A stretch of 64,000 nt of DNA from IMGVR_UViG_3300020195_000009:1-64000; one strand, 5' to 3'. Positions 694 through 30,929 are shown, counted from the first letter of the stretch. Program-made: numbers and translations. The notes: a model not told the origin generated them from the sequence alone.

Positions 694-723
694 TACACCG
701 GAACCAAATCCGTTTCAACACAA
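694..723 (-). promoter_or_regulatory. Sigma70-like promoter containing the GGTGTA motif
   Basis: Minus strand TTGAAA-17 nt (ending CCGGTG)-TACAAC upstream of the H1-like gene. Confidence 0.5.
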
Positions 724-797
724 GTTTCAATTGTCCAGCTCGGAGAATATAAGGCCGCCCCAAGTGGGAATGCAAGGGGTATCAGGGCGGTCAAACT

Positions 798-1097
798 TTA
801 CGGATCTCGGACCAGACCCCGAATGAGTTTCTGGTGAGTAGGGCTCTCTTGACCCTCTTTGATGTTCGCGTAATCACAACGTTTCACCTGGAAGCAGGTC
901 GCAATTACCCCTGGGCCTGCCCGTAACCCGTCGCAATTTTCACACACATTGGACCCAAAGTTCACCTTGAACCGAAGCTTGGAAGCCTCGCTCATCACCT
1001 CTCGGTAGGCCTCGGACAAGTCCTGAGCGGCCTTGTAGGCCGCCTCTGGGTCTCCGTCCAAGAAGGCCTGGTGAAGGGTCTCCGTAGGGTCGATCAG
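798..1097 (-). CDS. Hypothetical protein with Cys motifs; probable CTG start
   Basis: Only the 3' part of the 798..1328 track ORF looks protein-like (LIDPTETLHQAFLDGD...CENCDG...TCFQVKRC). CTG at 1097-1095 overlaps the TGA of 1094..1321. Confidence 0.5.
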   Translation of the reverse strand: MIDPTETLHQAFLDGDPEAAYKAAQDLSEAYREVMSEASKLRFKVNFGSNVCENCDGLRAGPGVIATCFQVKRCDYANIKEGQESPTHQKLIRGLVRDP

Positions 1098-1321
1098 CCG
1101 TTGACCGGGAATTCCCTGTCGAGATCCACGTCCGACAGGATCCCTAGTTGGCGAAGGGCCTTTTCCGCTTTCCCGTCGCCCATCGCCTTGCGGAGCCCCG
1201 GTAGCCTCGGATCTCGGAGCTGCACTGCCCTCTGGATGACCTTCGACAGTAGAGTGTTCCATTGGGTTGGTCCCGCTGGAATGTTGCGGGTTGGGGTCGG
1301 AACGTGTTTTCGGGTGGCCAT
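1094..1321 (-). CDS. Hypothetical protein
   Basis: 75-aa ORF with ATG 4 nt after the upstream stop, co-oriented with its neighbours. Confidence 0.55.
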   Translation of the reverse strand: MATRKHVPTPTRNIPAGPTQWNTLLSKVIQRAVQLRDPRLPGLRKAMGDGKAEKALRQLGILSDVDLDREFPVNG

Positions 1322-1324
1322 GGT

Positions 1325-1780
1325 TCATGGTCTCGTCACAAGGAGGACTAGAGCTTGGATGGCATCGTACTCAGCACGGAAGGAGTCTTCGAGACTCAAC
1401 AGCTCTTGCATGCGCTCTTCACGAGTCATCGAGCTGGACGTGTCGTAGTCACCGAAGAGTACGTGATAGTGGACTCGTAACGAGACGAACCGCTGCTTCG
1501 TCAGTTCGTACTCGAACCCGGCAAACTCCTCCAAGGCCCTAGCCGCCACCATCCGAGCTTCATCGATCTTGTGGACGACTTGCTCGACCCCTTGGAACTG
1601 ACGAGCGGCTTCCTGAACCTGCTCGGCTGCCTCCGTGAAGGTCTCGATCTGCCTCTTGAGGTCGACAAAAGGACCCATGGCGCCAGCCATCGAGAGCCCA
1701 GCTCGATGGCCCACAGCAACGGTTCCGTTACCGCTTTTCTTCTCTAGTCGTCGTTCTTTTCTCGCTGAGCTACTCGACAC
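1325..1780 (-). CDS. Hypothetical helical/coiled-coil protein
   Basis: ORF track; amphipathic helical composition; start uncertain. Confidence 0.6.
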   Translation of the reverse strand: MSSSSARKERRLEKKSGNGTVAVGHRAGLSMAGAMGPFVDLKRQIETFTEAAEQVQEAARQFQGVEQVVHKIDEARMVAARALEEFAGFEYELTKQRFVSLRVHYHVLFGDYDTSSSMTREERMQELLSLEDSFRAEYDAIQALVLLVTRP

Positions 1781-2396: not shown

Positions 2397-3236
2397 TTAC
2401 CTTACCAGGGGGAGACGACGGGTCGTGTTGCGCTTCTTGTCCGTCAATGTCTTGTCCGCAGCATAGCAATATTTGCAGCCTAGTGAGCACGACTCGTTGA
2501 TCGTGAAGGGGTCAACCATCAAAACGCACCCACATCCCTCGGAAGGGGGGAGCGCCCGGCCAGCCAACGCAAAGTCCTCCGGGGGTGCGCAAACGCCGGA
2601 GCCAAGGTTGGGATGGTACCCAGGATGCTTGGCAAGAAGCCGATCTTCATTACAGAGAAGCACCTGAACCCCACGATTTTGACCCACCTCAGCCACCTGA
2701 GCCAAGACGTTGAGGCGTTCCTGCTCGCTTCTCGTCTCAGGTAGGAGGTCGTTTTCCTGTAGGAAGGAAAGGTAGACCCTCTTGAGGCCGGCGTGAGCCG
2801 CCATCGCCGAGATGGTGTCGAACCGCTGGACAACATCAGGGACGATAGGGACAGGAGAAAACCGCCAGGTGATGTTCTCCGGCCCGAAGACGCTGGCAGC
2901 CATCAACAGCGAGTTGGCCCCATCCCGAAGGCTTGGGGCGCCCTTTTCGACCTCTTCCCAGCCGGTAACGGTGATGTGGATCTTGGTGGGTCGATTCTGA
3001 AGCCGATCCTTGTCGAAGATGAGATTGGTGGGGTCCTTCGTCCAAAAGACGAGCCCAAGCACGTCATCGGGACGCAGCGACCATCGGCCTGGAATGGCCG
3101 TTGTAGGGTCGAATCCAATCATGTAGCCCCGCTCCAACTGCGACAAAAACCAAGGCCATTTGGCATGAGGCAAATCCGTCCACCGGGAGAGGGAGTAAGG
3201 GAAGCCTTCTTCTTTACCGCTTCGGATCTGGGCCAC
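2397..3236 (-). CDS. DUF1848-family protein (radical-SAM-like, C-terminal Cys cluster)
   Basis: SRWTDLP...WF (family SRRTDIP), LVFWTKDP, GCGC and CSLGCKYCYA motifs. Confidence 0.8.
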   Translation of the reverse strand: MAQIRSGKEEGFPYSLSRWTDLPHAKWPWFLSQLERGYMIGFDPTTAIPGRWSLRPDDVLGLVFWTKDPTNLIFDKDRLQNRPTKIHITVTGWEEVEKGAPSLRDGANSLLMAASVFGPENITWRFSPVPIVPDVVQRFDTISAMAAHAGLKRVYLSFLQENDLLPETRSEQERLNVLAQVAEVGQNRGVQVLLCNEDRLLAKHPGYHPNLGSGVCAPPEDFALAGRALPPSEGCGCVLMVDPFTINESCSLGCKYCYAADKTLTDKKRNTTRRLPLVR

Positions 3237-3245: not shown

Positions 3246-3304
3246 TACACCGGGTTGAAGGTTGAACTTGAATCAAAATTGCGGTCGGTCGAGGGTCCGG
3301 TGTA
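3246..3304. promoter_or_regulatory. Divergent pair of CGGTGTA motifs serving the DUF1848 gene (minus) and the MazG gene (plus)
   Basis: TACACCG at 3246-3252 and CGGTGTA at 3298-3304, within about 10 nt of each start codon. Confidence 0.7.
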
Positions 3305-3313: not shown

Positions 3314-3961
3314 ATGATCGACCTGAACCAACTCGCCCAAGTCTCGAACACCATTGCCTGCGAAAAGGGCTGGTGGGACGGCTCACCCCGTTCAGTAGCT
3401 GCCTTGACGCTCCTCATGCAATCGGAAAATGCCGAAGCTCTGGAGGACTACCGAGCCAACAAGGGCCTGAAAGACATCTGGTACGAGGTGAAGTATGAGC
3501 CGGATCCGGGAACCCTGTTGGCGAACCCTGTCAAGGCCAGCATGACCGAGGAAGAGATCCAGCGGATGATAGCTACGGCGCAAGCCAACAACTTGAGCGT
3601 CAAGATCCTCGATCAGAAGCCATGCGGAATCGCCGTGGAGTTAGCAGATACGATTATCCGAGTCGCTGATTTCGCGGCTCATCGAAGCCTAGACCTCAAC
3701 GTGGAGTACGATAAACTCCCTTCCGGGCGGCCCTCCTTGGACTTTGAGGAGGCATTGGCGGAGTCAAACTACTGGTTCTCCAAGGTTTGGCATAGCCACA
3801 AGCACCGGGACGAAGGCGGCATCGCCTTCCAGCTCGTCAAGTCCGTGGACTGCCTTCTCCTCATGTGCGCCAACAAGGGCATTGACATCGAGAAGGCGAT
3901 CGAGATCAAGACCGCTTTCAATAGAACGAGACCCGTTAGGCACGGTAACAAAAAGATATAG
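3314..3961 (+). CDS. MazG-like NTP pyrophosphohydrolase
   Basis: EKGWWD...SENAEALEDYR, IAVELADTIIRVAD, and IDIEKAIEIKTAFNRTRPVRHGNK, typical of all-alpha NTP-PPases. Confidence 0.8.
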   Translation: MIDLNQLAQVSNTIACEKGWWDGSPRSVAALTLLMQSENAEALEDYRANKGLKDIWYEVKYEPDPGTLLANPVKASMTEEEIQRMIATAQANNLSVKILDQKPCGIAVELADTIIRVADFAAHRSLDLNVEYDKLPSGRPSLDFEEALAESNYWFSKVWHSHKHRDEGGIAFQLVKSVDCLLLMCANKGIDIEKAIEIKTAFNRTRPVRHGNKKI

Positions 3962-8508: not shown

Positions 8509-8515
8509 TACACCG
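8509..8515 (-). promoter_or_regulatory. CGGTGTA motif upstream of clpX
   Basis: CGGTGTA-10 nt-ATG; one of 14 such upstream sites. Confidence 0.65.
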
Positions 8516-12409: not shown

Positions 12410-12703
12410 TTATGAAACGACGGCCTTTTTCAAAGGCGACACGGGCCGAACTTTCACCTTTTTTGAAGCGGGTTTCGCAGCAACCGTCGCCATCTGTTTG
12501 GTGAAGGGATTCATCCGCTGACACTCTGGTGTTGCAGGGGTGTCCTTGAGTGTGATCTTCACAAGACCGGGAAGTGTGATCTCCCCTTCCGCCTTGAGGG
12601 CCTCGACAACGGCCGCTGCGTAGTGGTCGACGTACTTGGCGGCATCACCCTTAGTGATGCCAAGACGGGTGGCGAGGGATTCAACGAACTGGGACTTGGA
12701 CAT
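12410..12703 (-). CDS. HU-family nucleoid-associated protein
   Basis: MSKSQFVESLATRLGITKGDAAK...EGEITLPGLVKI...RMNPFT...AAKPASKKVKVRP...LKKAV matches the HU/IHF fold pattern. Confidence 0.9.
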   Translation of the reverse strand: MSKSQFVESLATRLGITKGDAAKYVDHYAAAVVEALKAEGEITLPGLVKITLKDTPATPECQRMNPFTKQMATVAAKPASKKVKVRPVSPLKKAVVS

Positions 12704-12713: not shown

Positions 12714-13592
12714 CTACACCAACTTGTAGTTTTTCTGGAAGTTACCTGCGAAGGATGGAGTCTGCTTGTGGCACGGGACGCATAGAGTCCGCCCGTTTGA
12801 GATGTCCCACATAGCTTCGCAACCGTAGGCGTCTTCGAGGGTTCGGATGTTGTACTCCACGAGGAGGACGGCGAATGGCTTGATGTGATCGGCGTGAAGT
12901 GGACCTCCAACCCGACCACACTCTTGGCACGTGAACTTGTCGCGGTTGAAGACAGCCTTCCTCCAGGTAACGGAGCGTTCGGTGTTGCGAATCAAGAGCG
13001 CAAGCGAAGTCTTGCCGCCCTGCCAGTTGGAACCGTTGGGGCCTTGAAAGCGACCTCGATTAGCTTGAGAGATCCGTTGTTTAGCTTCCGAACTGTGAGT
13101 ACGACCAAAGAAAGGGTTGAGAGGTCCCACCTTTTTGGACCCCGCTTCTGATAGAGCCTGGCGGACTTCGGGTCGGGCCATTGCCTCGCGATTAGCAGCC
13201 CTCCAAGTTTCCGTTTGAGTGATAGCCTTGAGTCTAACGCCTGCCGCCGCTTTAACCTCCTCCGAGTGGGTTCGACCAAACATCGGATTCCTTGACCCAG
13301 AGACCGCCACACTTCGACGAGCTTTGACCTCTGGTTTCAGGTTGGTCTCCCGAAGGGTTTCCGAAGTTCGTTTGCGTGCCTCTTCGGACTTGGGCTTCCC
13401 GAACATCGGGTTTCGGGGACCTGAGAGAGCTTCGGACTTGGACCTGGCGGGGATGCCTTGAATCTTCATCCACTTGCGGATCGAAAGCTCCGAAATCCCG
13501 TCCAAGCGGGCAATCTGTCGTATCGAGAGGCCCTCCACAACATAGCGCTGATACAGGTATTCTTTGGTGAGGTTGAGCGCTTTCACACTCAA
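12714..13592 (-). mobile_element. Free-standing HNH homing endonuclease with NUMOD3-like repeats
   Basis: Repeats NPMFGK, NPMFGRTHSEE, NPFFGRTHSSEAK; C-terminal CQECG...LHADHIKP...NGRTLCVPCHK. Confidence 0.9.
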
Positions 13593-14678: not shown

Positions 14679-14737
14679 TTAAGCACCTCTCCGAGACTCA
14701 CTACACCCAGGAGCCCTGAATAACCTGAGAATAATAT

Positions 14738-16020: not shown

Positions 16021-16307
16021 CCCACCTGTACACCATGCTTAGCCAGCATGGCCTTCAAGGCGGGGTCGTCCTCTTCGTCTGGGTCCTCATGGGCCATCTG
16101 GAGAACCCTAGAAAAGCGGTCCGTCCCGGTCTTCCAGCCGTCGATGGCCTCGTGGACCACCTTGGTTACTTGGTCTTGCTCTTCCGGGGTCCGAGCCCTG
16201 GCGTACATGAGCCGGAAGGTCTCGACTTGCTCAGCATTCAGCTCTTTCCCGACGTGGCGAGCTTTGAGAGCGAGAATCAGCGTGTTTTTACGTTGCCTCA
16301 GACCCAT
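16017..16307 (-). CDS. Hypothetical protein
   Basis: ORF track; ATGA overlap with the downstream gene. Confidence 0.6.
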   Translation of the reverse strand: MGLRQRKNTLILALKARHVGKELNAEQVETFRLMYARARTPEEQDQVTKVVHEAIDGWKTGTDRFSRVLQMAHEDPDEEDDPALKAMLAKHGVQVG

Positions 16308-16334: not shown

Positions 16335-16532
16335 TCAGATTTCACGGCCACAGCCTCGGCAGATGAGGACGAGGAGGTAATCATCCTTGTCCAGAAACGA
16401 ACCCCTCCGCGACCCACAATGAGGGCACGGCTCTGGTCCCGTGTCAGGTCGGTCGGGCGGAAGCGCCACTTTACGGCCCGATGGAGCCTTCAAGTGGCTC
16501 AGGTCCCGCACGCCTTGCTTCGTGAGCTTCAT
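16335..16532 (-). CDS. Small zinc-ribbon protein
   Basis: CPHC...ICRGC; GGTGTA motif upstream. Confidence 0.6.
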   Translation of the reverse strand: MKLTKQGVRDLSHLKAPSGRKVALPPDRPDTGPEPCPHCGSRRGSFLDKDDYLLVLICRGCGREI

Positions 16533-16547: not shown

Positions 16548-16874
16548 TTACACCGGATCCCGAGCATCGGCTCGAAGACGAGCCTGGTCCGCCATCATAC
16601 GATCAAACTTCTTGCGGTTGGACTTGCCGGCCTTGACGATCAGGCTCAGTTCCGTCTGAAGGTTTGCCCGGACCTTGGGGTCGGAGGCGGTCTTGATAGC
16701 CCTGGAGGTGCGCACGAACTCCTGACGGGCTCGAACCAGCCAGTTGGACAGGCCCTTGATCTCGCCCGTCACGTCCTCGCCCGTCCCCCAGCAGCGGAAG
16801 CAGATGCCCCGGCAAACATGGGAAAAGCGGGAAAGTACCCCTTCACCCTTACAACGTTCGCATGTAGTTCCCAT
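16548..16874 (-). CDS. Small protein with a DnaJ-type CxxCxGxG zinc finger
   Basis: CERCKGEG...CFRCWGTG. Confidence 0.65.
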   Translation of the reverse strand: MGTTCERCKGEGVLSRFSHVCRGICFRCWGTGEDVTGEIKGLSNWLVRARQEFVRTSRAIKTASDPKVRANLQTELSLIVKAGKSNRKKFDRMMADQARLRADARDPV

Positions 16875-16909
16875 GAGAGAGGAACACCTGGGATCCGTCG
16901 AGATTCAAC

Positions 16910-20460: not shown

Positions 20461-20467
20461 TACACCG
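20461..20467 (-). promoter_or_regulatory. CGGTGTA motif upstream of the AAA ATPase gene
   Basis: Lies just after the 16-bp hairpin; reads CGGTGTACATT. Confidence 0.6.
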
Positions 20468-20477: not shown

Positions 20478-20514
20478 AGAGCCGCACCTTTCTAACTCAG
20501 AAAGGTGCGGCTCT
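20478..20514 (-). terminator. 16-bp perfect hairpin between DUF1257 and the AAA gene
   Basis: AGAGCCGCACCTTTCT-AACTC-AGAAAGGTGCGGCTCT, followed on the minus strand by TCGCTTTC (weak U tract). Confidence 0.6.
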
Positions 20515-20894: not shown

Positions 20895-20920
20895 GGGTGA
20901 TAGGGTTTACCCTATCACCC
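20895..20920. other. 11-bp perfect inverted repeat overlapping the DUF2997 stop
   Basis: GGGTGATAGGG-TTTA-CCCTATCACCC; no U tract follows on the minus strand. Confidence 0.6.
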
Positions 20921-21100
20921 GCTGTTGACTTCGTGAACCGTCGGGCAGTTGCCGTCGGGGAGGTGCTCGTCCGAGACCAGCGTACCCATCTGCTGGGTCA
21001 CCTTGCTGATTTCGTTGCAGTCGTGATCCCGACGGTTGATGACCTCGTGGACCACCTTTCCGTCTGGCTTGAAGGTGACCTTGTATTCCATCGATTCCAT
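20915..21100 (-). CDS. DUF2997 protein
   Basis: YKVTFKPDGKVVHEV...DC...TQQMGTLVSDE; synteny with DUF1257 and the AAA gene. Confidence 0.7.
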   Translation of the reverse strand: MESMEYKVTFKPDGKVVHEVINRRDHDCNEISKVTQQMGTLVSDEHLPDGNCPTVHEVNSG

Positions 21101-21140: not shown

Positions 21141-21776
21141 TTACTCTACACCGTTTCCCCCGAAACGAACAGTAGCTCCTCGTTTGACGACGACAACCCC
21201 TTCTTCGGGAGCTTCGGCGCCTTTCGGGCCAGCCCATGGGTCTTTGGGTGGCGTCGGAGAAGATCCTGACAACATTCTACCACTTTGGCTCGGAGTGTTC
21301 AGAGCTAGAAGTTGAGGCGTTAGCCTCACTGGCTCCTTTTTTTGTGGATCCTCGGTTGAAACATGAGCCTGAGGTTGGGGTTTTGGGGGACTCTCCGGTA
21401 CCATTTCGATCGGAGGTGGGGCTTCTTCCACCGGGAGACTCATGATCGGAATGGGAACCGAGACCGCAGGCTCCACGAGGTCTCGTGGGTCCATCCACGC
21501 AGATTGCCCTCTTACCGTAGGCAGGGGCCCAGGGTCAAACATCTTGAATTGTTTGCCTTGGATCTGCGAAAACCTTGGGTCAGAGGGATCCATTCGAGGG
21601 ACTTCCGAAAAGAGCCGCTTCTCCCAGGTCATCACCCGCTGGTCGAACTTGCTGGTACCATGCTGAGACCGGGTACATTCGGGTTGAACGCACCGATCAC
21701 AAAACTGCAACTTGAAGTCCTCGTAAGGGACCTGTTGATTGTTGCACTCCCCGAGCTGGTCCAGACGCCTGACCAT
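21141..21776 (-). CDS. Hypothetical protein with N-terminal Cys cluster and Pro-rich C-terminus
   Basis: C...FCDRCVQPEC; Pro-rich tail. Confidence 0.65.
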   Translation of the reverse strand: MVRRLDQLGECNNQQVPYEDFKLQFCDRCVQPECTRSQHGTSKFDQRVMTWEKRLFSEVPRMDPSDPRFSQIQGKQFKMFDPGPLPTVRGQSAWMDPRDLVEPAVSVPIPIMSLPVEEAPPPIEMVPESPPKPQPQAHVSTEDPQKKEPVRLTPQLLALNTPSQSGRMLSGSSPTPPKDPWAGPKGAEAPEEGVVVVKRGATVRFGGNGVE

Positions 21777-24800: not shown

Positions 24801-24873
24801 CTTCCTCTCCCGCCCAATCAGCGAGGCCCAGCACTTCCCCCAAGGGCTCGAAATCGCTATTGTTCGGCATCAA
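21802..24873 (-). CDS. polA: Family A DNA polymerase with a 3'-5' exonuclease domain and no 5'-3' exonuclease
   Basis: ExoI LDLETQG, ExoII NAKFD, ExoIII YACSDA; ATGRIS, motif A VDFAGEELRI, motif B RQQGKIANFSLVYGGG, NYPIQGAGAD, motif C VHDEIVFE. Confidence 0.95.
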   Translation of the reverse strand: MMPNNSDFEPLGEVLGLADWAGEEEITPTPIEEILKRFEASEEVPEEEDSPLDLVVGLAPVVLEEPPDPSDDEAPIQLSPAPSVESSDDDMFGGGAGGDEGADAASYMADMGLRQQREVPDIIKPWMKYHEFILIKSVEQLNEVVDAALKSGKCALDLETQGLDTRVYWRRPEDIREVFEEYWDEGTARPERIPQTVHKIVGYCLSPDGKTGYYCPVRHVAEESVNVDIVGAGRAIQRLCRAAQPVLTEEGFKNDPLGSPLIKEQGKVKLFFWNAKFDQEMLYPVTGIDFWHPESHEDGLLLYYCKYTNDKNLSLKTKSEKTLFVQGPNGPIKDERGMSIPYEMIELKELFVTSRGARREIQFASLHPEEGLRYACSDAICTYLHCDNPALILLARDPLYASTYRLEKQTAQALRGMERNRVYLDIPYVKSLFETARKEADGYREQIVALADQHGFHGFDPQSPQQLSEFLFDSPNGLNITPKPERNEKSGWFKTDADTLEKLVEGDAKVNSVLLVIVKYRQVEKVIGTYLESMVANCDSNNEARLQFKQHGAATGRISAPGGKPEHGFCGFPPHGIPGTYDEKKPKVATALRQAFKAREGFTMVKVDFAGEELRIVTNLSKEPVWIKEFKEGTGDLHSITARAFFNKAEITKQERQQGKIANFSLVYGGGAQAIMRATGCSQQEGARRKANFDKAMPIFTKWVKEQKAYVHAKKGIKTPFGRWIYIPEIDSEDKPLVGAAERWSINYPIQGAGADIMKMALVLLHKEFYRLGWMQQDLIRMLMTVHDEIVFEVKHHILQKAMPVIDRLMTLPGRLIRWEVELEVEALIDTTWDAKYDYKKIMKGELRPPKEGEKPLKATEVRIGDKVYQKVPEWLEGHLRPDYMPQLEGEESQAVAPLPPVPVAAPVSTSITPKGPETPAPVLPTTPAVAAPVQATPAPPTPQVNGKTNGNGKLEVFTYQLPVTTLLSIRQVAGVCINLLDVGSCKILHLVCGQTNETLIDPNLGIRINPEEFARRLRDHGL

Positions 24874-25291
24874 TCACCACAACTGTATACACCCCCTGCC
24901 GCCAGAACTGGACCAGCTCCGCAACCAAACGTCGAGCATTTGGGTCTTCGATGCCAGAGGGCTCAAAGCACCATGGCATCTTAGTGGCCGTTGGGACGCA
25001 CTCCTTAGGTCGATAGAAAGGGCAGGGATCTCGTCTCTCACACACACGATTGTCAACAGGCAACTTTCGCAGAGCCCCATCGGGGGGGATCCCAAGAGCC
25101 TTCACAAGGGGTGAAGTCCACCCCGCCAGAGCATGATCCATGACCGCTTTCTGGACCTTTGTAAGCAAGCTCATTGCGGGGACCTCTTGGGCCGGAGCCC
25201 ACGTGTCTTCCCACCGATCCCCGTACTGGTAGATGAGGTACAACTCCAAGTCCCCCAGCTCAGAGGTCTTGATTTTTAGGCGTCTAGGCAC
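24857..25291 (-). CDS. Hypothetical Cys-containing protein
   Basis: CERRDPCPFY...C...WC. Confidence 0.65.
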   Translation of the reverse strand: MPRRLKIKTSELGDLELYLIYQYGDRWEDTWAPAQEVPAMSLLTKVQKAVMDHALAGWTSPLVKALGIPPDGALRKLPVDNRVCERRDPCPFYRPKECVPTATKMPWCFEPSGIEDPNARRLVAELVQFWRQGVYTVVVIDAEQ

Positions 25292-25937
25292 CTCGGATCT
25301 TCTCGCCGATCTTGTCCAAGAGGAGCTGTGTTCGTTTGCGGGCCTCTCCTGTTGCGATCAGCCTATTTTGAACATCATGGTGAAGGTGGTCGAGAAGTTT
25401 GCCGACGACAAGAAATCCCTTCATCTCGAAGTGGGGCTTCGCTTGCCTCAGTCGGCTCTCACACACGGCAAGTAGATCGAGAAGATCGTGTTCCTCCTCC
25501 GTGGGCCCACTCTTCTTGGACTTCCAGTCCGGAGCCGGCCCCTCGGGGGTGATGATGCCGTACGCTTTCTCCAACCCGAGAAGAACTTGGGTGAACTTGG
25601 CGTCCGTCTCCCCCGTGTACTTCTTCCAAAGAGCGAAGATGTCCCATCTCTCTTGGCATACGAAACACCAGACGTGGGACGGGGATCTTGCGCTTTCTGG
25701 GTACACCCTAGCGGAAGGATCCGCGTCCTTACCATGAAAAGGACAGGAGACCTGCTCTTCGTTGGAAGACCCCGAATACCGTAGCGTGGCTCCAAACCGT
25801 CGAAGCAAATCGTGAGCTGATACACTTACCTTGAGGGTTTCGGCCCGTTGCTTGACCCACTCACGGTAGGCGTCGTTGCGTTCGGCATCCCGCAGGGCCT
25901 CCTTGTAGTTGTCTCCAAATCCGTCATCGCGAGCCAT
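25284..25937 (-). CDS. Primase-type CHC2 zinc-finger protein without a TOPRIM domain
   Basis: VSCPFHGKDADPSARVY...HVWCFVC...DIF; 217 aa with a helical C-terminus. Confidence 0.8.
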   Translation of the reverse strand: MARDDGFGDNYKEALRDAERNDAYREWVKQRAETLKVSVSAHDLLRRFGATLRYSGSSNEEQVSCPFHGKDADPSARVYPESARSPSHVWCFVCQERWDIFALWKKYTGETDAKFTQVLLGLEKAYGIITPEGPAPDWKSKKSGPTEEEHDLLDLLAVCESRLRQAKPHFEMKGFLVVGKLLDHLHHDVQNRLIATGEARKRTQLLLDKIGEKIRGA

Positions 25938-26155
25938 TACAGTTCATCCCAATCGTCTGGGAGTTCAGAGGGTACCCCAGCGATGATCTGGCTTCGGATG
26001 ATCATGCACTCACACGATGTGTAAAGAGTCGAAGCGTAGAACGTGCTGGCATATGGGTTTTGAAAGACTGAAACGAGGTCGCCCTGCTTGTGGACAACCC
26101 GCACCCCAGTCCCACCGCACGCAAAACACCCCGTTGAAAATGTCGTGGAGGACAT
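25937..26155 (-). CDS. Small Cys protein
   Basis: CFACGGTG...CEC; GGTGTA motif just upstream. Confidence 0.5.
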   Translation of the reverse strand: MSSTTFSTGCFACGGTGVRVVHKQGDLVSVFQNPYASTFYASTLYTSCECMIIRSQIIAGVPSELPDDWDEL

Positions 26156-26157: not shown

Positions 26158-27642
26158 TTACACCGAGAACATCCCCTCTACCGATTTCTCGATAGAGTGA
26201 GCCACGTTACGGTGATCTTCGAGACTCATACCCTTGTCACTACTCGTCCCAGCAAACTGGTCACGGTTGTAGATGCTCCTTGTCTTCCAGTCGACACCAG
26301 CCACGAAGGGGGCGAAGAACTGCCCATCTCTTCGTTTTAGGCAGTCGAAGAGTGTCGTCCCAGCAGTCCGGTGCTCATCATTCAGGTACGTCGTTGTAAC
26401 GACGTCAGCACTCCGCTCAGCCTCGTTGGCGTAGCTGAGGGCTCGGAGCTTGTAGCGACCTTCGGACTTGTCTGCATAATCCTTACCGTCACGGTTGATC
26501 TGGAAGAGCAGGAGAACAGCTACTTTCTCACCGTGGTTGAAGTGCAACGCAAGCTTCTTTGAGTCACGAATGACCGAGTTCAACTCGATCGTGTAGTCCT
26601 TGCCACGCTTCTTTCGACGGGGCTCTACGAGGCCACCGTGGTCGATGATGAGCAGGTGGATCTCGTTCTTCTGGTGAGCAAGCTCCGCTTGCATCTTGAT
26701 GTCGTCAGGGGTGACGTCATCATCGGGACTCCAAACGTCGAAGGACCCGTACTCAGGGTTGTTGACGAAGTCGTCGATCACAATCTTGTAGAACTGCTCT
26801 TCCGCCGCTGTCAGAGTGCCCGCACAAATCTTGTCGTACTCAAGAGGATCGTAACCCAGGGCCTTAAACCTTGGGTTCGCCGAGTGGAGGGCGTAGATCA
26901 TCTGCCGTAGTTGCTCGTACGGCATCTCCAGCGTTATGTAGTAGACGTTGGAGCGGTAGCGGGTAACCAGATTGTACGCCCAATTGAGGGCAAAGGTAGT
27001 TTTCAGCTCACCTGTGAATGCAGCATGCAACCAAAGTTCACCCTTCTTGACTCCTCGGATGATCTTGTCGATGTCGTTGAGCCCGCAGAACTTACCCCAG
27101 GCGAGCCCCTTGTTGGCCTTGGCCTCCTGGTACTGATCCCAAACGTCTTGCCCGTCTTCACGGAGGTTTCCTTGAAGGCGTGTGTTGTGCTGGTAGACCA
27201 GAAGCTTGTGGGCATTCTGGGAGAAGTGAAGGACGCCCTCACGAAGCCCCTGCTTCTTCTCCTTGTCAATGACAAGACCCTTGGCGATGATTTCTTGAGC
27301 TTCTTTTAGAAGCGTGATGGCCTTGATCTTGTTCTGCTCTTCGACCGTGGAAGAGAGCAGGTGGGAGTAATTTGTACGGATGTAAGGCTTCGCACCGTCG
27401 AAGTCCTTGATTCTTTCGGAAACCTCCTGGTCCCGACGGGTCTCGAAGTAGTCCGAGATGGTCTGCCGAGCTGGGATCTCCAACCGCTGCTGGAAGAAGT
27501 TGAGAATGAACTCGTAGATGCGTTGGTCGGCTGGCTGCGTCCACTCGACGTGGGCAGCAATGAGCTTTTGAAAATTGCCGATGAGGTTCTCTTGAGAGAC
27601 CCCACCATCCACATCGATGACCGAACGAAGAAGGCCTTTCAT
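26158..27642 (-). CDS. DnaB-like replicative helicase (SF4)
   Basis: GLNDIDKIIRGVKKGELWLHAAFTGELKTTFALN, YITLEMPYEQL, LLIIDH, LLFQINR, ERSADVV. Confidence 0.85.
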   Translation of the reverse strand: MKGLLRSVIDVDGGVSQENLIGNFQKLIAAHVEWTQPADQRIYEFILNFFQQRLEIPARQTISDYFETRRDQEVSERIKDFDGAKPYIRTNYSHLLSSTVEEQNKIKAITLLKEAQEIIAKGLVIDKEKKQGLREGVLHFSQNAHKLLVYQHNTRLQGNLREDGQDVWDQYQEAKANKGLAWGKFCGLNDIDKIIRGVKKGELWLHAAFTGELKTTFALNWAYNLVTRYRSNVYYITLEMPYEQLRQMIYALHSANPRFKALGYDPLEYDKICAGTLTAAEEQFYKIVIDDFVNNPEYGSFDVWSPDDDVTPDDIKMQAELAHQKNEIHLLIIDHGGLVEPRRKKRGKDYTIELNSVIRDSKKLALHFNHGEKVAVLLLFQINRDGKDYADKSEGRYKLRALSYANEAERSADVVTTTYLNDEHRTAGTTLFDCLKRRDGQFFAPFVAGVDWKTRSIYNRDQFAGTSSDKGMSLEDHRNVAHSIEKSVEGMFSV

Positions 27643-28571
27643 CCGAGTGGCCCCCCGCCTTGTTTCTTCTTCCCGTACTTGTTCTTGGGGTAACCCGGCC
27701 CTGAAAGGACGGAATCACGCTCTGAAGGCTGGTGCGCATCGGAATCCACATGGGATGGTCGATCCGAAATGGGCGCACGGGGAGCTTTGCGGACTACAGC
27801 GACGGGCTCTTCGTCGTCCTTGTCAATGGTCATCCCTGGCTCTTCCCGAGGTCTTGCACCCACTACCCCTCGGTACTCAACCTGACCGGAACGTTCTTTC
27901 ACGAGATCGATAACTTCAAACTTGCCTTGAATGTAATCCCCGACGTCACGGCTCCACGTGTAGTGACCTTCACCAAATGGGCTGTCAGGCTCTTCTACGA
28001 GCCAGGTGGGCAGATTCAACGACTGCCGGACCATCAACGCCTCTTTGAGGATGCCCCCCATGGCCTGGTTCTTCCAACCAAGAAACCCGAGGCGAATGAT
28101 GGCAAGATGGTACGTTGAACCTATGAGATCCTCAACCGTGTTGTAGGTGGCGACCTCATCCCGTTGCTTTCGGGTACGTGATGTCACGGACTCTCTACCA
28201 AACCAGACGTTCTTGAGTTTCTCGTCGGTGATAATTTGAAAGTTGAACCCCTCCACCTTCACCGTGCCCCACTTGGCGATGAACGTCCACTTGAAGTGGC
28301 AGAGTAGGTCTGTCCACCAACCCTTCAAAAGAAGGTTGATCCTGGTCTTGTCGACGACCGGGGGGCCCCCATGTTCGACGTGGGGTATATAGAGCGGGCT
28401 ATCATCACGGGCCGGCTTGGCTTGCGCAAGTTCAGGCCCAAGCTTGGCGATCACCCTCTTGTTGTAGAGGCACCAGCACTCCTGCATCTTGGCCTCACCG
28501 CCCTTATGGACGATGATGTTCCCAACCCCGTGGCACACGGGGCAGTCCTTGTTGGCTGCGACAGGTCCCAT
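27639..28571 (-). CDS. Possible DnaC/DnaI-like helicase-loader derivative with an N-terminal Zn motif and no intact P-loop
   Basis: CPVCHGVG...ECWC; LAIIRLGFLGWKNQAMGGILKEALMVRQSLNLPTWL resembles the loader core; adjacent to the helicase gene. Confidence 0.5.
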   Translation of the reverse strand: MGPVAANKDCPVCHGVGNIIVHKGGEAKMQECWCLYNKRVIAKLGPELAQAKPARDDSPLYIPHVEHGGPPVVDKTRINLLLKGWWTDLLCHFKWTFIAKWGTVKVEGFNFQIITDEKLKNVWFGRESVTSRTRKQRDEVATYNTVEDLIGSTYHLAIIRLGFLGWKNQAMGGILKEALMVRQSLNLPTWLVEEPDSPFGEGHYTWSRDVGDYIQGKFEVIDLVKERSGQVEYRGVVGARPREEPGMTIDKDDEEPVAVVRKAPRAPISDRPSHVDSDAHQPSERDSVLSGPGYPKNKYGKKKQGGGPLG

Positions 28572-28599
28572 CCCGAGGGGATCTACACCGGCTCCTAAG

Positions 28600-30318
28600 T
28601 CACGCAGTTTCCTTTTCCCGAAGGGCAGCGACAAGGTCTCGAAGTTCCCCTTCCCCACGCTCGAATTTGAGCGCCCCGACGGCTGCCTCCCCGATGACTT
28701 GGTCAATGAGGCCTTTCTTCTTCCGAAGCTTTTGAACGACCTTGTGATCGATCGTCTCTCTCTTCTTACCTTCCCTATTGGGGCGTTCGGCGATGAGATG
28801 TACCGCAAGGACCTTTTGGTGAGGGGAGCCGATGCGGATCATACGACCGAGAAGTTGGACGTACTGACCCCAGCTCCAGGGGGAGTCGAAGAAGACCATC
28901 CCGACGGCCGCCTGGAGGTTGATGGCCTCTGAACCGGCATCCGTGATGAAGATGACCTTCGTGTCACTGCTGAGGTCCTGGAAGAGGTCCTGGGCCTTCT
29001 TGCGGTCCGTGTCCTTCTCCTTGCCCGTGATGCGGACGCTCTTGATGCGCTCTACTGCAAGAAGCTTTTGAAGCCTTCCCACAAGCTTCTCGAACCGGGT
29101 GTAGACGATGACCTTCTCGTCCCCTAGCTCCTCGGAGAGAAGGTCGATGAGGGCCGATTCCTTGGCGCTCTTCCCCTCGAAGTGCTCACCTTCCTCGAAC
29201 TTGAGAAGGGCGAGGGAATCCACTACCTCTTGGGCGTAGATGAGGCTCGTCAGCTCTTTGGTGTCCCGGTAATCCTTCAGGTCACCGTCACCCATTTCCA
29301 GCATCCCAGCGAGGGCTTCCGCGTACTTCTTGTCCTCGGCTGAGGATAGCTCGCAGATGATCTCACGGGTCGTCAGGGAGGGTAGCTCGTCGCTCACCAC
29401 GTGTTTTGGTCTTCCGTAGAAGTAGGGATCGATAGTCGACCGAAACTGACCGAGATTCTTGTAGCCAACGATGATCGGGATCTTCACCCCACCCTTTACC
29501 CGCTGCAATTCCGTGACGCAGTAGGTGTTCATGAAGGAGGTTTTTGACGCGAAAGTCTCCGACCGTATGACCTTGTAGACCCCGAATCCTTCGATCAAGT
29601 TGTTCTTCAAGAGAGTTGCCGTAAGCCCCCAGCATCGAATCGAGCGTTCGGATAGGAATTTACACGTTTGATGGGTCTTTGTGCTGGGGTTCTTGAAGGC
29701 CGTGGCTTCATCGAAGATGGTGAGGATCTTCGGAACTCGAAGGGTCAGTTCATCGAGGTACCCCCGGCCCGCCGTGGGTTGGGTTCCGGGTTTTGCATCG
29801 GACCCTGGGGCTACCTTCTGGATGCCTTGATCCCAGTCTCGGACAAGCACGTGGTAATTTGTGACAAGGATTGCTCGGGGTTGGCCGGGATCCGAGGAAG
29901 CCTTTGCCCAAGCCAAGTAGGCAGCCTTCCTTTGGTCCAACGTTCCTGTGGCCACGTAGGTCTTGATACCCACCGTGAACTTCTCGACTTCGGACGCCCA
30001 CTGCCGGATGGCCGACTTCGGGCAAATGACGATGGCTTTGATCGCCGGATCTCTCTCCCAAAGGTAGCAAAGAGCGCCAATTGCCTGAATGGTCTTACCT
30101 AAGCCCGTGCCGTCACCGAGCACCATTCGGTTGATCATGAGCAGGTGGTAGATCCCCTGCGCTTGGTAGTACCGAAGACGGAAAGGCTGAGGTGTCCCGT
30201 CGAGCCCCATGAACTCGGTCCGAAACATCGACGTCGGCTTCAACTCCAACGTCTTGGACGCTCGAACCTGCTTGATCTGTTCGTAGACCGGGTTCGGATT
30301 TGAAACAGCAGCCGTCAT
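28600..30318 (-). CDS. SNF2-family helicase/ATPase
   Basis: LRYYQAQG, GDGTGLGKT, FDEAT, LTATLLKN, KVIVYT, AGSEAINLQAA, DSPW...GRMIRIG. Confidence 0.9.
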   Translation of the reverse strand: MTAAVSNPNPVYEQIKQVRASKTLELKPTSMFRTEFMGLDGTPQPFRLRYYQAQGIYHLLMINRMVLGDGTGLGKTIQAIGALCYLWERDPAIKAIVICPKSAIRQWASEVEKFTVGIKTYVATGTLDQRKAAYLAWAKASSDPGQPRAILVTNYHVLVRDWDQGIQKVAPGSDAKPGTQPTAGRGYLDELTLRVPKILTIFDEATAFKNPSTKTHQTCKFLSERSIRCWGLTATLLKNNLIEGFGVYKVIRSETFASKTSFMNTYCVTELQRVKGGVKIPIIVGYKNLGQFRSTIDPYFYGRPKHVVSDELPSLTTREIICELSSAEDKKYAEALAGMLEMGDGDLKDYRDTKELTSLIYAQEVVDSLALLKFEEGEHFEGKSAKESALIDLLSEELGDEKVIVYTRFEKLVGRLQKLLAVERIKSVRITGKEKDTDRKKAQDLFQDLSSDTKVIFITDAGSEAINLQAAVGMVFFDSPWSWGQYVQLLGRMIRIGSPHQKVLAVHLIAERPNREGKKRETIDHKVVQKLRKKKGLIDQVIGEAAVGALKFERGEGELRDLVAALREKETA

Positions 30319-30319
30319 G

Positions 30320-30907
30320 TCAGTCCTTGGTGGGCCAGAGGTCGACCGAGATCGGAGGCAAGCGTTCGCCCGCCTCGATGGCATGACGCCGCTCTTCGTC
30401 CATCTGGGCTTCCATCTCCCGCATCCGTTGGTGGTCCGCTTCCGTTGGCATGGGCTCCTCAAAGCGGCCATTTGAAGCTGACCTTGCCATCTTGACGTGA
30501 TCGATGAACTCTTTCGGGGGTCGAACGTTGTGGGCCTCGACGTAGTGTGCGAACCCCTGTGGCCAAACGAAGACGGAGTCCCCGAGGCACATCGAGCCGT
30601 TGTGAATCTTGCAGAGACGGCACCCCGAATAGCCCCTCCACTGCATGAGGGACTTCCCGCCTTTGAGGAAGGACGCGACCAGGCGTCTCTCTTCTTCACT
30701 CCACGTGTTGTCGATGAAGTCCTTGGGGTCCGGAAGCGAGGCATACTTCGCCACGTAGTCCTTTTGCCAGGCGGACATCGCCGGATTCGAGTCCGGCTCC
30801 CCCGCGTAGACCTTCCAGTACCCGATGCCCTTGAGCCCTTGAATTTCCGAGTAGAACCTCCCGGAGGACCCGTCGATGAGGAACGTCGGATGGGCAGTAA
30901 GGATCAT
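30320..30907 (-). CDS. Hypothetical protein with a Cys/His motif
   Basis: WRGYSGCRLC...NGS...FVWPQGFAHYVEAHNV; GGTGTA motif upstream. Confidence 0.65.
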   Translation of the reverse strand: MILTAHPTFLIDGSSGRFYSEIQGLKGIGYWKVYAGEPDSNPAMSAWQKDYVAKYASLPDPKDFIDNTWSEEERRLVASFLKGGKSLMQWRGYSGCRLCKIHNGSMCLGDSVFVWPQGFAHYVEAHNVRPPKEFIDHVKMARSASNGRFEEPMPTEADHQRMREMEAQMDEERRHAIEAGERLPPISVDLWPTKD

Positions 30908-30929
30908 GCCCTCGTTACACCGAGGTAGG

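What the first reader, a model, noticed from the sequence alone, without database searches (positions are those of the whole stretch)
694..30922. (C)GGTGTA motif just upstream of 14 non-structural genes: phage-specific promoter class
GGTGTA, mostly as CGGTGTA, was found at 694, 3246, 3298 (plus strand), 8509, 12715, 14702, 16029, 16549, 20461, 21147, 24888, 26159, 28584 and 30916. Most lie 3-25 nt before a start codon, with about 46-49 nt at two sites. It often sits inside the last codons or the stop of the previous gene (dnaB ...TCG GTG TAA; HNH ...TTG GTG TAG; ...GAT CCG GTG TAA), which suggests selection on the DNA motif. I saw none before structural genes (33.4-64 kb). At 694 it overlaps a -10 box 17 nt from TTGAAA; elsewhere no -35 is evident. 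Inference: an early/middle promoter read by a phage-encoded or alternative sigma factor, often giving leaderless or short-leader mRNAs.
Basis: partly seen in the sequence, partly recalled or inferred. Interest (0 to 1): 0.7.

Follow-up and report, generated by a model that had tools for sequence, protein, structure and literature searches.

The report
Huge-phage GGTGTA promoter for leaderless genes
A six-base word, GGTGTA, sits 9-10 bases before the start of many non-structural genes (and some tRNAs) in this uncultivated huge phage and all its relatives. It is most likely a phage-specific promoter read with a phage-encoded sigma factor, giving messenger RNAs with little or no leader.

Summary
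The window is the first 64 kb of a 286-kb metagenomic huge-phage contig. Of all 4096 hexamers, GGTGTA is the most enriched in the 40 nt before predicted starts: 26 seen against 1.9 expected (P 5e-21). It also ranks first in three relatives with 49, 58 and 68% GC. Its end lies 9-10 nt before ATG, and single-base variants are not enriched. It is also enriched 14-50 nt upstream of genes that carry their own Shine-Dalgarno sequence. It lies 9-45 nt before eight tRNA genes, directly after a terminator hairpin, and on both sides of a divergent gene pair. In a few sites it replaces the -10 part of a second, bipartite promoter class (TTGAWTC-N13/14-GTGTTC-N7-ATG) that I found. The clade encodes a conserved sigma-70-family protein with an HNH-like insertion, and no RNA polymerase was detected. 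The closest precedent is phage phiEco32, whose sigma gp36 reads AATGTA centred at -11.5. My best reading (about 0.7) is a -35-independent, -10-type promoter for a phage sigma that gives leaderless or 1-2-nt-leader transcripts. No RNA data could be found, so start sites are inferred. Rivals are a non-SD ribosome signal, a regulator site, or an RNA processing site.

The parts
694..699 (-). GGTGTA. Hybrid site with a -35-like TTGAAAC at 712-718, 13 nt upstream of GTGTA. An ATG follows 49 nt downstream (644-642), with an SD-like AAGGAAAGGA in the leader. The ORF runs off the window's left end.
712..718 (-). -35-like TTGAAAC of the hybrid promoter. Its spacing to GTGT is the same as in the class-2 promoters (TTGAWTC-N13/14-GTGTTC).
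3246..3251 (-). GGTGTA 9 nt before GTG 3236 (gene 2397-3236, 279 aa). One half of a divergent pair.
3299..3304 (+). GGTGTA 9 nt before ATG 3314 (gene 3314-3961, 215 aa). The other half of the divergent pair.
8509..8514 (-). GGTGTA 10 nt before ATG 8498 (ClpX-like AAA+ gene, 7215-8498).
12715..12720 (-). GGTGTA 11 nt before ATG 12703 (gene 12410-12703). Its TA plus the next G form the TAG stop of gene 12714-13592.
14702..14707 (-). GGTGTA 23 nt before GTG 14678 (thymidylate synthase, 13632-14678). The leader holds an SD-like GGAGAGG.
16029..16034 (-). GGTGTA 8 nt before ATG 16020 (gene 15460-16020). It lies inside the end of gene 16017-16307.
16549..16554 (-). GGTGTA 16 nt before ATG 16532 (gene 16335-16532). 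It overlaps the TAA stop of gene 16548-16874.
16882..16908 (-). The only full class-2 promoter in the window: TTGAATC-N14-GTGTTC, then 7 nt, then ATG 16874 (gene 16548-16874).
20461..20466 (-). GGTGTA 23 nt before ATG 20437 (AAA ATPase, 18857-20437), with an SD-like GGAG in the leader. It is the only invariant block in the orthologous region of six phages.
20480..20512 (-). Terminator-like hairpin (15 bp stem, -25.3 kcal/mol, z -5.8) with a U-rich tail, ending 13 nt before GGTGTA 20461. Two relatives have the same layout with different stem sequences.
21147..21152 (-). GGTGTA 46 nt before ATG 21100 (gene 20915-21100). The leader holds an SD TAAGGAG.
24888..24893 (-). GGTGTA 17 nt before ATG 24870 (family A DNA polymerase, 21802-24870). 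It lies inside the upstream gene, where it codes G-V-Y, and is kept in relatives of 47-67% GC.
26159..26164 (-). GGTGTA whose TA plus A is the TAA stop of the DnaB-like helicase (26158-27642). The ATG of the next ORF follows only 3 nt later (25937-26155). This does not fit the 9-10 nt class. Here GGTG may simply act as an SD in stop-start coupling.
28584..28589 (-). GGTGTA 12 nt before ATG 28571 (gene 27639-28571), in the 28-nt gap after the SNF2 helicase stop.
30916..30921 (-). GGTGTA 8 nt before ATG 30907 (gene 30320-30907).

Best explanation
GGTGTA (fuller form t-Y-GGTGTA-R) is the core of a phage-specific promoter that works like an extended -10 element and needs no -35 element. Host RNA polymerase carrying a phage-encoded sigma-70-family factor binds it and starts transcription about 9-10 nt after the final A.

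The best sigma candidate is the conserved 412-aa sigma with an HNH-like insertion at G000 208445-209683, outside the window.

At most sites the start point is the A of the ATG or 1-2 nt before it, so the mRNA is leaderless or nearly so. At a minority of sites the motif lies 14-50 nt upstream, and the leader then carries an ordinary Shine-Dalgarno sequence. The same element drives some tRNA genes.

It serves replication, nucleotide-metabolism, tRNA-region and small unknown genes, but not the virion genes. It is therefore probably an early or middle class.

Shown: the motif, its position, its strand, its clade-wide invariance and the presence of the sigma gene.
Inferred: that the motif is read as DNA by RNA polymerase, which sigma reads it, the exact start site and the timing.
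For: Enrichment and specificity:
- Rank 1 of 4096 hexamers upstream of starts in this genome and in three relatives of 49-68% GC: P 5e-21, 1e-31, 5e-21, 2e-35.
- Pooled over the four genomes, 112 seen against 4.3 expected. That far exceeds any SD hexamer.
- Single-base variants are not enriched.

Position:
- Without gene calls, ATG peaks at offsets 9-10 after the motif.
- With independent public gene calls in three more distant relatives, it lies 9-10 nt before called ATGs.
- Unrelated phages show no such signal.
- It is also 3.5-7x enriched at 14-50 nt, where it cannot act as a ribosome site. 54% of those genes have an SD-like word.

Non-coding and operon context:
- It lies 9-45 nt before 8 tRNA genes (about 1.4 expected). 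Two of them start exactly 9 and 10 nt after it.
- It follows a strong terminator hairpin, and it is the only invariant block in six orthologous regions.
- It flanks both sides of the divergent pair at 3246/3299.
- Divergently placed first genes carry it twice as often as co-directional genes (20% vs 11%, P 0.001).

Link to the bipartite class:
- A bipartite class keeps TTGA at -33..-30 and Y-G-T-W at about -12..-9 from ATG in three genomes.
- GGTGTA takes the -10 place at the same 13-14 nt spacing in hybrid sites.

Leaderless signature:
- C at -1 in 61% vs 41.5% of other genes; ATG starts in 84% vs 68%. This fits the known pyrimidine -1 / purine +1 start-site preference and the AUG need of leaderless mRNAs.
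- A -10-like signal 10-12 bp before the start codon is the accepted signature of leaderless genes (PMC3160421).

Machinery:
- The sigma family has 72 homologues, on contigs of up to 512 kb. 49 of 63 match Pfam Sigma70_r2.
- The model's sigma-2 domain matches sigE, sigH, sigB and sig28 at Z 7-8.
- No RNA polymerase family was detected, including in two complete relatives.

Precedent: phiEco32 sigma gp36 reads AATGTA centred at -11.5, with the fork junction at T-12/G-11 (PMC12276001).
Against: - No transcription start site data exist. No RNA run was listed.
- The tight 9-10 nt coupling to ATG is also what a translation signal would show.
- About 60 of the 113 sites in this genome are not near starts, about what composition predicts. 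A 6-8 bp element alone would therefore fire inside genes unless other context matters.
- If T-G-T-A sat at -12..-9 as in phiEco32 and in class 2, the start would fall 1-2 nt before the ATG at the modal spacing, not on it.
- The site at 26159 (3 nt) cannot give a leaderless start at that ATG.
- The link between this particular sigma and this motif rests only on co-occurrence. The genome has two more sigma-4-like ORFs.
- The sigma shows no sequence similarity to gp36.
Confidence: 0.7

Rival explanations
1. GGUGUA acts in the mRNA as a ribosome-recruitment signal that is not a Shine-Dalgarno sequence. It sits 9-10 nt before AUG and is read by the ribosome or a phage-modified ribosome. Transcription starts elsewhere.
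For: - The spacing to ATG is very sharp, at 9-10 nt, close to where SD sequences lie.
- GGUG can pair with CACC of the 16S 3' end.
- The motif occurs before single genes inside tightly packed arrays and sometimes overlaps the upstream stop.
- The 3-nt site at 26159 looks like ordinary GGTG-SD coupling.
Against: - It stands before tRNA genes, twice exactly 9-10 nt from the first base.
- It is enriched 14-50 nt upstream, where genes carry their own SD.
- GGTGAT, the true complement of the anti-SD extension, is barely enriched (14 vs 6.2). GGTGTG, which from my memory of the 16S sequence is complementary to the 1395-1400 region, is not enriched (5 vs 3.1).
- Canonical AAGGAG and GGAG(A) are used by other genes, so the host anti-SD is ordinary.
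- Pairing GGUG with CACC would call for a spacing of about 3-5 nt, not 11-12 (established SD geometry; inference).
- Hybrid sites place it at a fixed 13-14 nt from a -35-like box.
- No S21 or S1 homologue was found in the contig.
Confidence: 0.12
2. GGTGTA is the binding site of a phage-encoded transcription regulator (activator or repressor) placed next to the start of its target genes. It is not the core promoter element itself.
For: - It is a short, invariant, clade-specific word near gene starts.
- The phage encodes further HTH/sigma-4-like proteins.
Against: - The word is asymmetric and strictly strand-oriented, with a 2-nt spacing tolerance to the start. That is unusual for operators.
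- No other conserved promoter element is present around these sites.
- Sigma-70-type consensus promoters are not enriched in 12-32 kb: 8 against 5.0 +/- 2.3.
- It occupies the -10 slot of the bipartite class in hybrid sites.
Confidence: 0.08
3. GGUGUA marks an RNA processing site. A phage or host endonuclease cuts about 9-10 nt downstream, which releases leaderless mRNAs and mature tRNA 5' ends from long precursors.
For: - The same 9-10 nt distance to ATG and to the first base of two tRNAs.
- Many sites lie directly after tRNA 3' ends in the 186-204 kb tRNA array.
Against: - Sites directly after a strong terminator hairpin and in a divergent intergenic region would have no precursor to cut and no other promoter candidate.
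- Hybrid sites have a -35-like box at fixed spacing.
- No known ribonuclease measures 9-10 nt from a hexamer (my knowledge).
Confidence: 0.06
4. The pattern is an artefact of composition, codon usage at gene ends (Val-stop), or my gene calls.
For: - The total count in the window is not above shuffles.
- Some sites code for conserved residues, such as G-V-Y before the polymerase gene and the V-stop of DnaB.
Against: - The ATG peak at offsets 9-10 needs no gene calls.
- Independent public gene calls agree.
- 77 of 98 sites are intergenic and only 12 overlap a stop.
- The signal holds from 47 to 68% GC and is absent from unrelated phages.
Confidence: 0.01

Closest known systems
Middle/late promoters of Escherichia phage phiEco32, read by the phage sigma gp36 (PMC12276001)
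   Same: - A short single element with the same T-G-T-A core (AATGTA vs GGTGTA), placed at about -14..-9.
- It is read by a phage-encoded, highly divergent sigma-70-family protein on the host core enzyme.
- G rather than A sits at the position where strand opening begins (T-12/G-11).
- It is used for non-early phage genes.
   Different: - The two upstream bases are GG, not AA.
- The sigma shows no detectable sequence similarity to gp36, is twice as long and carries an HNH-like insertion.
- Here the element is locked 9-10 nt from ATG (leaderless), which I did not find reported for phiEco32 in the passages read.
- gp36 also contacts a -35 region and is helped by gp79. No -35 conservation is seen here, and no gp79 equivalent was looked for.
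Leaderless genes of Actinobacteria and Deinococcus-Thermus, with a -10 box about 10-12 bp before the start codon (PMC3160421)
   Same: - A promoter-type signal at a fixed short distance from the start codon.
- No SD in between.
- A preference for ATG.
   Different: - There the signal is the housekeeping TANNNT. Here it is GGTGTA, which lacks A at the second position and T at the last.
- It belongs to a phage clade, not to a host genome.
T4 late promoters (TATAAATA, read by gp55 with gp33 and the sliding clamp) and other phage sigma cascades such as SPO1 gp28 and gp33/34. This comparison is from my own knowledge, not tested here.
   Same: - A -35-independent single-element promoter.
- It is read by a phage-encoded, minimal or divergent sigma.
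- It defines a temporal gene class.
   Different: - Different sequence and different gene class (here not the virion genes).
- T4 late mRNAs have leaders with SD.
- Clamp dependence is unknown here.
ECF (group 4) sigma promoters, for example GGAAT/GGAAC-N16-18-GTT for SigR/SigH. The consensus is from my own knowledge.
   Same: - The class-2 promoters found here (TTGAWTC-N13/14-GTGTTC, that is GAAT-N16-GTT) resemble this layout.
- The phage sigma matches ECF sigma-2 domains best.
- The sigma gene is itself preceded by a class-2-like promoter in two genomes, as ECF sigmas often are.
   Different: - Class 1 (GGTGTA) has no -35 element, which ECF sigmas normally require.
- The protein has an inserted HNH-like domain, and its C-terminal HTH does not reach Sigma70_r4 thresholds.
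phiKZ-type jumbo phage promoters read by phage multisubunit RNA polymerases (PMC8244752)
   Same: A huge phage with its own short promoter motifs before many genes.
   Different: - No phage RNA polymerase was detected here.
- phiKZ mRNAs have 31-40 nt leaders, and no leaderless transcript was found there.
- phiKZ DNA shows no GGTGTA-ATG signal.

Membership tests
Sigma-70-family -10-type promoter element (extended -10, -35-independent class) | Strand-specific position just upstream of genes, including genes for non-coding RNAs | tested here: met
   Rank 1 hexamer upstream of starts in four genomes. Eight tRNA genes carry it 9-45 nt upstream.
Sigma-70-family -10-type promoter element (extended -10, -35-independent class) | Lies at about -15..-7 from a mapped transcription start site | not testable with these tools
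   No RNA run was listed for this sequence. The start is inferred from the ATG and tRNA +1 positions.
Sigma-70-family -10-type promoter element (extended -10, -35-independent class) | Housekeeping consensus TAnnnT (A at -11, T at -7) | tested here: not met
   The motif is GGTGTA(R), with no conserved T five bases after TA. So it is not a primary-sigma -10 box.
Sigma-70-family -10-type promoter element (extended -10, -35-independent class) | Can be combined with a -35 element at a fixed spacer length | tested here: met
   TTGAAAC-N13-GTGTA at 694-718. TTGATTY-N13/14-GTGTA occurs three times in G005. These are the same spacings as the 22 class-2 sites. The number of hybrid sites is small.
phiEco32 gp36-type promoter | Consensus AATGTA | tested here: not met
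   Only the TGTA core is shared. The upstream bases are GG, and single-base variants are not enriched.
phiEco32 gp36-type promoter | Cognate sigma homologous to gp36 | tested here: not met
   BLASTP of the phage sigma against gp36 gives E = 2.7. Both are sigma-2-like only at the fold or profile level (PMC12276001).
Shine-Dalgarno ribosome binding site | Complementary to the CCUCC core of the 16S 3' end | tested here: not met
   Sequence inspection shows no GGAG or GAGG in the motif. AAGGAG and AGGAGG are separately enriched before other genes.
Shine-Dalgarno ribosome binding site | Found only before protein-coding starts, at 5-10 nt | tested here: not met
   It is also found before tRNAs. It is also enriched at 14-50 nt, with a separate SD in the leader.
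Leaderless mRNA genes | Promoter-like signal about 10-12 bp before the start codon, with no room for an SD | tested here: met
   The motif end lies 9-10 nt before ATG. The criterion is that of PMC3160421.
Leaderless mRNA genes | Strong preference for AUG and a mapped 5' end at the start codon | tested here: inconclusive
   ATG is used in 84% of motif genes vs 68% of others (P 0.001), and C at -1 in 61% vs 41.5%. The 5' ends are not mapped.
Sigma-70 family (group 4 / ECF-like) for the candidate reader protein P0001 | Sigma-2 domain | tested here: met
   49 of 63 family members match Pfam Sigma70_r2, best E 4.6e-7. The protein itself scores 20.9 bits, below the 24-bit cut-off. The model aligns to sigE, sigH, sigB and sig28 sigma-2 at Z 7.2-8.2 and rmsd 2-3 A. 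The tool warns that Z below 8 alone is weak.
Sigma-70 family (group 4 / ECF-like) for the candidate reader protein P0001 | Sigma-4 domain with HTH | tested here: inconclusive
   A C-terminal helical HTH-like segment is present. Only GerE/LuxR-type hits appear, in 3 of 63 members, plus weak PDB hits to RcsB and DesR. No member reached Sigma70_r4 among the families listed at E<=0.01.
Sigma-70 family (group 4 / ECF-like) for the candidate reader protein P0001 | Binds core RNA polymerase and directs initiation at the motif | not testable with these tools
   The complex prediction with DNA was not folded by the tool, so it gives no evidence either way.

The most novel reading that the evidence does not exclude
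GGUGUA is, wholly or in addition, an RNA-level signal: a translation start signal independent of Shine-Dalgarno pairing, or a measuring signal for 5'-end formation. It would be shared by a whole clade of huge phages whose hosts probably differ. These phages would then mark about 10-15% of their genes for a private route of expression, whatever the host's anti-SD.

A second novel element, compatible with the main reading, is the probable reader itself: a sigma factor whose sigma-2 domain is split by an HNH-like zinc module. No such sigma turned up among the structures and papers I searched.
Probability: 0.12. Interest if true: 0.8.

Novelty: new variant of a known kind. Interest (0 to 1): 0.58.

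Why it matters
Huge phages known only from metagenomes have almost no described regulatory signals. This six-base word, with its fixed 9-10 nt distance to ATG, has several uses:

- It gives a simple, testable key to their gene starts and their operon and timing structure.
- It predicts that about a tenth of their genes, plus some tRNAs (including suppressor tRNAs), are made as leaderless transcripts. Leaderless mRNAs can be translated without Shine-Dalgarno pairing, which may suit phages with different hosts.
- It nominates a compact orthogonal sigma/promoter pair for biochemical study: a sigma with an HNH-like insertion reading a single -35-independent element.
- It improves start-codon annotation. 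For example, it favours ATG 28571 and ATG 30907 in the window.

If the main reading is wrong and the signal acts in RNA, the finding would matter more.

Tried and rejected
- Megablast of 12 kb against phage records: no relatives. Relatives were then reached through the DnaB-like protein.
- RNA evidence: no RNA run was listed in two searches.
- Literature: searching the literal motif with 'phage' gave only primers and unrelated hits. No paper on this clade's promoters was found.
- Phage RNA polymerase: Pfam Rpb2_6, Rpb1_2 and T7-type searches of this contig and five relatives all gave nothing. The T7-type family had no positive control. Two-barrel polymerases of the YonO or crAss type are not covered. 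A regex for the DxDGD motif gave only loose hits.
Foldseek on the whole improved model found only the HNH domain. VIA-align was needed to see sigma-2.
- Sigma with motif DNA: the complex job was not folded by the tool, so it counts as no evidence.
- SD depletion: genes with the motif at 8-12 nt have an SD-like word in 11% of cases against 42% for others. I do not count this as independent evidence, because the motif itself occupies the SD position.
- Pairing with 16S rRNA: I considered the anti-SD extension (GGTGAT) and the conserved 1395-1400 region (GGTGTG). Both were rejected because those variants are not, or hardly, enriched.
- Termination-reinitiation signal tied to the upstream stop codon: rejected, since only 12 of 98 sites overlap a stop.
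- Repeat element or mobile cassette: rejected, because the flanks are not conserved.
- Simple terminator scan: it did not list the 20480-20512 hairpin because its T-run rule was not met. Folding shows the hairpin.
- Ribosomal protein S21 and S1 homologues: none found in the contig.

Full report
WHAT THE WINDOW IS

The 64-kb window is the first part of a single 286,005-bp viral contig (57% GC). IMG/VR classes it as linear, and CheckV estimates it at about 60% complete. A microbial-mat metagenome DNA run holds it fully.

No phage record resembles it at the DNA level. Its family A DNA polymerase is only 32% identical to that of a 485-kb uncultured phage.

Nearly all genes lie on the - strand:
- At 0-33 kb: replication and nucleotide-metabolism genes, namely ClpX-like, DnaJ-domain, thymidylate synthase, AAA ATPase, PolA, DnaB-like and SNF2 helicase.
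- At 33-64 kb: large virion and tail genes.

The rest of the contig holds 45 tRNA genes at 187-204 kb and two suppressor tRNAs with anticodon CUA.

CHECK OF THE OBSERVATION

Every listed site exists. The total number of GGTGTA in the window is unremarkable, 20 against 15.7 +/- 3.8 in shuffles. However, 15 of the 20 are on the gene strand, and 14 sites (13 on the - strand plus 3299 on the +) stand within 50 nt of an ORF start.

Distances from the motif end to the start codon:
- 8-12 nt at seven sites;
- 3 nt at one site;
- 14-23 nt at four sites;
- 46-49 nt at two sites.

I built a gene model that knows nothing of the motif (a three-periodic Markov model). I then ranked all 4096 hexamers by enrichment in the 40 nt before the 270 predicted starts of the whole contig. 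GGTGTA came first, with 26 seen against 1.87 expected (P 5e-21). With the motif end restricted to 6-14 nt before the start, it is 20 against 0.48 (P 1e-25). None of the 18 single-base variants is enriched to any comparable degree.

Without any gene model, ATG follows GGTGTA at offsets 8-12 in 29 of 113 sites, against about 7 expected. The only flanking preferences are a pyrimidine before the motif and a purine after it. No -35-like conservation appears.

THE SIGNAL BELONGS TO A CLADE

The DnaB-like protein led to ten related loci with 57-83% amino-acid identity and 47-67% GC. The motif recurs in them on the gene strand, often at orthologous places.

I fetched 400 kb, 251 kb and 400 kb of three relatives and repeated the unbiased ranking. 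GGTGTA is again rank 1 in each: P 1e-31 at 58% GC, 5e-21 at 68% GC and 2e-35 at 49% GC. The distance peaks at 9-10 nt.

In three still more distant contigs, public gene calls made by others place GGTGTA 9-10 nt before called ATGs three, three and four times within 15-21 kb.

A piece of the unrelated 485-kb phage, phiKZ and phiEco32 show no excess of ATG after GGTGTA.

In the orthologous region before the AAA ATPase gene of six phages, GGTGTA is the only invariant block.

DNA-LEVEL OR RNA-LEVEL SIGNAL?

The sharp distance to ATG could mean either a -10-type promoter of leaderless mRNAs or a ribosome site. Several results favour the promoter.

(a) The motif is also enriched 3.5-7-fold at 14-50 nt before starts in all four genomes. 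54% of those genes carry an SD-like word at the usual place. Window examples are 14702, 20461, 21147 and 694.

(b) It stands 9-45 nt before eight tRNA genes, where roughly 1.4 would be expected from site density. In relative G004, tRNA-Lys and a suppressor tRNA begin exactly 9 and 10 nt after it. I checked their acceptor stems.

(c) At 20461 it follows, by 13 nt, a 15-bp hairpin with a U-rich tail (-25.3 kcal/mol, z -5.8). Two relatives keep this layout with different stem sequences.

(d) The divergent genes at 3236 and 3314 each have the motif 9 nt before their start, within a 77-bp spacer. Across the four genomes, first genes of divergent pairs carry it in 20% of cases against 11% for co-directional genes (P 0.001).

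(e) Canonical SD words are used by other genes, above all the virion genes: AAGGAG 37 vs 7.4 and GGAGAC 36 vs 6.6. The word that would truly extend anti-SD pairing, GGTGAT, is barely enriched (14 vs 6.2).

(f) The base before the ATG is C in 61% of motif genes against 41.5% elsewhere. The start codon is ATG in 84% against 68%. This agrees with the known pyrimidine(-1)/purine(+1) preference of transcription starts and the AUG requirement of leaderless mRNAs (established knowledge).

I do not count the lack of SD in the 9-10 nt spacer as evidence, because the motif itself occupies the SD position.

A SECOND, BIPARTITE PROMOTER CLASS

The other enriched words led to about 22 sites of the form TTGAWTC-N13/14-GTGTTC-N7-ATG. 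Most lie on the + strand at 214-277 kb, before small genes. One is in the window, at 16882-16908. The spacing is exact: 8 sites at 13 nt, 13 at 14 nt and 1 at 15 nt, with at most one match at any other spacing.

Relatives have their own versions:
- ggTTGAAA-N16-GTTGTA-N5-ATG;
- TTTTGATTC-N13-GCGTAGTA-N5-ATG.

In all three genomes TTGA lies at -33..-30 from the ATG and Y-G-T-W at -12..-9. The start must therefore be at or next to the A of ATG, which means leaderless mRNAs.

GGTGTA takes the place of the -10 part at the same 13-14 nt spacing in site 694-718 of the window and in three sites of the 68% GC relative. The simplest picture has two layouts. GGTGTA is a strong element that needs no -35. 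Class 2 is a weaker core that depends on a -35.

Whether one factor reads both is open. The class-2 -10 part differs between genomes while GGTGTA never does. This could instead mean that a host sigma reads class 2 and a phage sigma reads GGTGTA.

THE LIKELY READER

A Pfam Sigma70_r2 search finds one ORF in this contig, at 208445-209683 on the - strand (412 aa as called publicly). It scores just below the cut-off. Counterparts exist in all five relatives searched, some of them above the cut-off.

Features of the family:
- It has 72 homologues, on contigs of up to 512 kb. Several are named sigma-24-type by JGI.
- 49 of 63 members match Sigma70_r2.
- An HNH-like domain is inserted between the N-terminal helices and the nearly invariant helix FKLYLARxVHNIYANWCRTRxRRYKE (ZRANB3 HNH, E 1e-7). 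In the alignment the catalytic D-H pair appears replaced.
- A good model (pLDDT 85.6) superposes on the sigma-2 domains of sigE, sigH, sigB and sig28 at Z 7.2-8.2, skipping the insertion. It superposes on the HNH domain at Z 8.5. Taken alone such Z values are modest; together with the profile hits they are convincing.

The sigma gene itself is preceded by a class-2-like promoter with a leader, both in this genome (TTGATAA-N14-GTGTCC) and in G004.

No RNA polymerase family was detected in this contig or in five relatives, two of which are complete. Two further sigma-4-like ORFs exist, at 153399-154028 and 198367-198771. The assignment of GGTGTA to the 412-aa sigma rests on co-occurrence and on the match between an invariant motif and an invariant recognition helix. 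It is an inference.

COMPARISON WITH WHAT IS KNOWN

The nearest precedent is phiEco32. Its sigma gp36 directs host polymerase to middle and late promoters with the consensus AATGTA centred at -11.5. T-12 is the last paired base and G-11 the first unpaired one (PMC12276001).

The core T-G-T-A and its approximate place are the same here. The two upstream bases, the protein (no similarity) and the leaderless arrangement differ.

A -10-like signal 10-12 bp before the start codon is the accepted mark of leaderless genes in bacteria (PMC3160421). In phiKZ, the model jumbo phage, no leaderless transcript was found (PMC8244752).

I file this as a new variant of a known kind, namely phage-sigma-specific, -35-independent promoters. 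I do not file it as a member of the gp36 system.

WHAT DOES NOT FIT

- At the modal spacing, the phiEco32 or class-2 register would put the start 1-2 nt before the ATG rather than on it.
- Site 26159 (3 nt) cannot give a leaderless start at that ATG. There and in two relatives, GGTG may simply serve as an SD in stop-start coupling. Yet the DnaB C-terminal codons keep GGTGTA even at 47-50% GC.
- About half of all sites in the contig are not near starts. So either context matters or internal starts are tolerated.

VERDICT

Direct proof, meaning mapped 5' ends or in vitro transcription, is missing.

Confidence in the promoter/leaderless reading is about 0.7. Interest is moderate to fairly high.

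Noticed in passing
window 16882-16908 (-); about 21 more sites in the contig at 214-277 kb (outside the window): A second promoter-like class, TTGAWTC-N13/14-GTGTTC-N7-ATG, with exact spacing, mostly before small genes. Relatives have genome-specific versions (TTGAAA-N16-GTTGTA-N5-ATG; TTGATTC-N13-GCGTAGTA-N5-ATG). All imply leaderless mRNAs.
   Followed up: yes
G000 208445-209683 (-), outside the window (L001:439-1677): A conserved sigma-70-family protein whose sigma-2 domain is interrupted by an HNH-like zinc domain. The catalytic D-H appears replaced. It has 72 homologues, on contigs of up to 512 kb.
   Followed up: yes
G000 239885-239962 and 241106-241182 (-), outside the window: Two tRNAs with anticodon CUA (amber suppressors; ARAGORN calls them Pyl). 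One has GGTGTA 25 nt upstream. Relative G004 also has two, with GGTGTA 10 and 40 nt upstream. This may point to TAG recoding of some genes. The large virion ORFs in the window are intact under the standard code.
   Followed up: partly
G000 186973-203829 (-), outside the window: An array of 45 tRNA genes interspersed with small ORFs. Many of these ORFs have GGTGTA directly after the preceding tRNA's 3' end.
   Followed up: partly
window 42977-42984, 48545-48551, 55750-55759, 59027-59034 (-), and further sites up to 160 kb: T-rich words (CTTTTTAT, TTCTTAT, TTCCTATAAA, CCTTTTAT) lie 10-70 nt before virion-gene starts. Those genes, unlike GGTGTA genes, have GGAG(A)-type Shine-Dalgarno sequences. 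This may be a late promoter class. The statistics are weak (P about 1e-4 to 1e-5).
   Followed up: partly
window 28600-30907 (-): The 714-aa SNF2 ORF (ATG 30744) overlaps by 425 nt an ORF in another frame (30320-30907) that has GGTGTA 8 nt before its ATG. Coding potential favours two genes, 30320-30907 and 28600-30318, rather than the long ORF.
   Followed up: partly
G000 153399-154028 (-) and 198367-198771 (+), outside the window: Two further ORFs with sigma-4-type helix-turn-helix motifs: one of 209 aa with two such motifs, and one of 134 aa with a cysteine-rich N-terminus. The second sits in a divergent pair whose two GGTGTA motifs lie back to back, 1 nt apart (198378-198390).
   Followed up: no
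G000 about 209760-209800 (-), outside the window: TTGACA-N17/18-(G)TAAGA(C) lies upstream of the sigma gene's class-2-like promoter. It may be a host primary-sigma promoter that starts the cascade.
   Followed up: no
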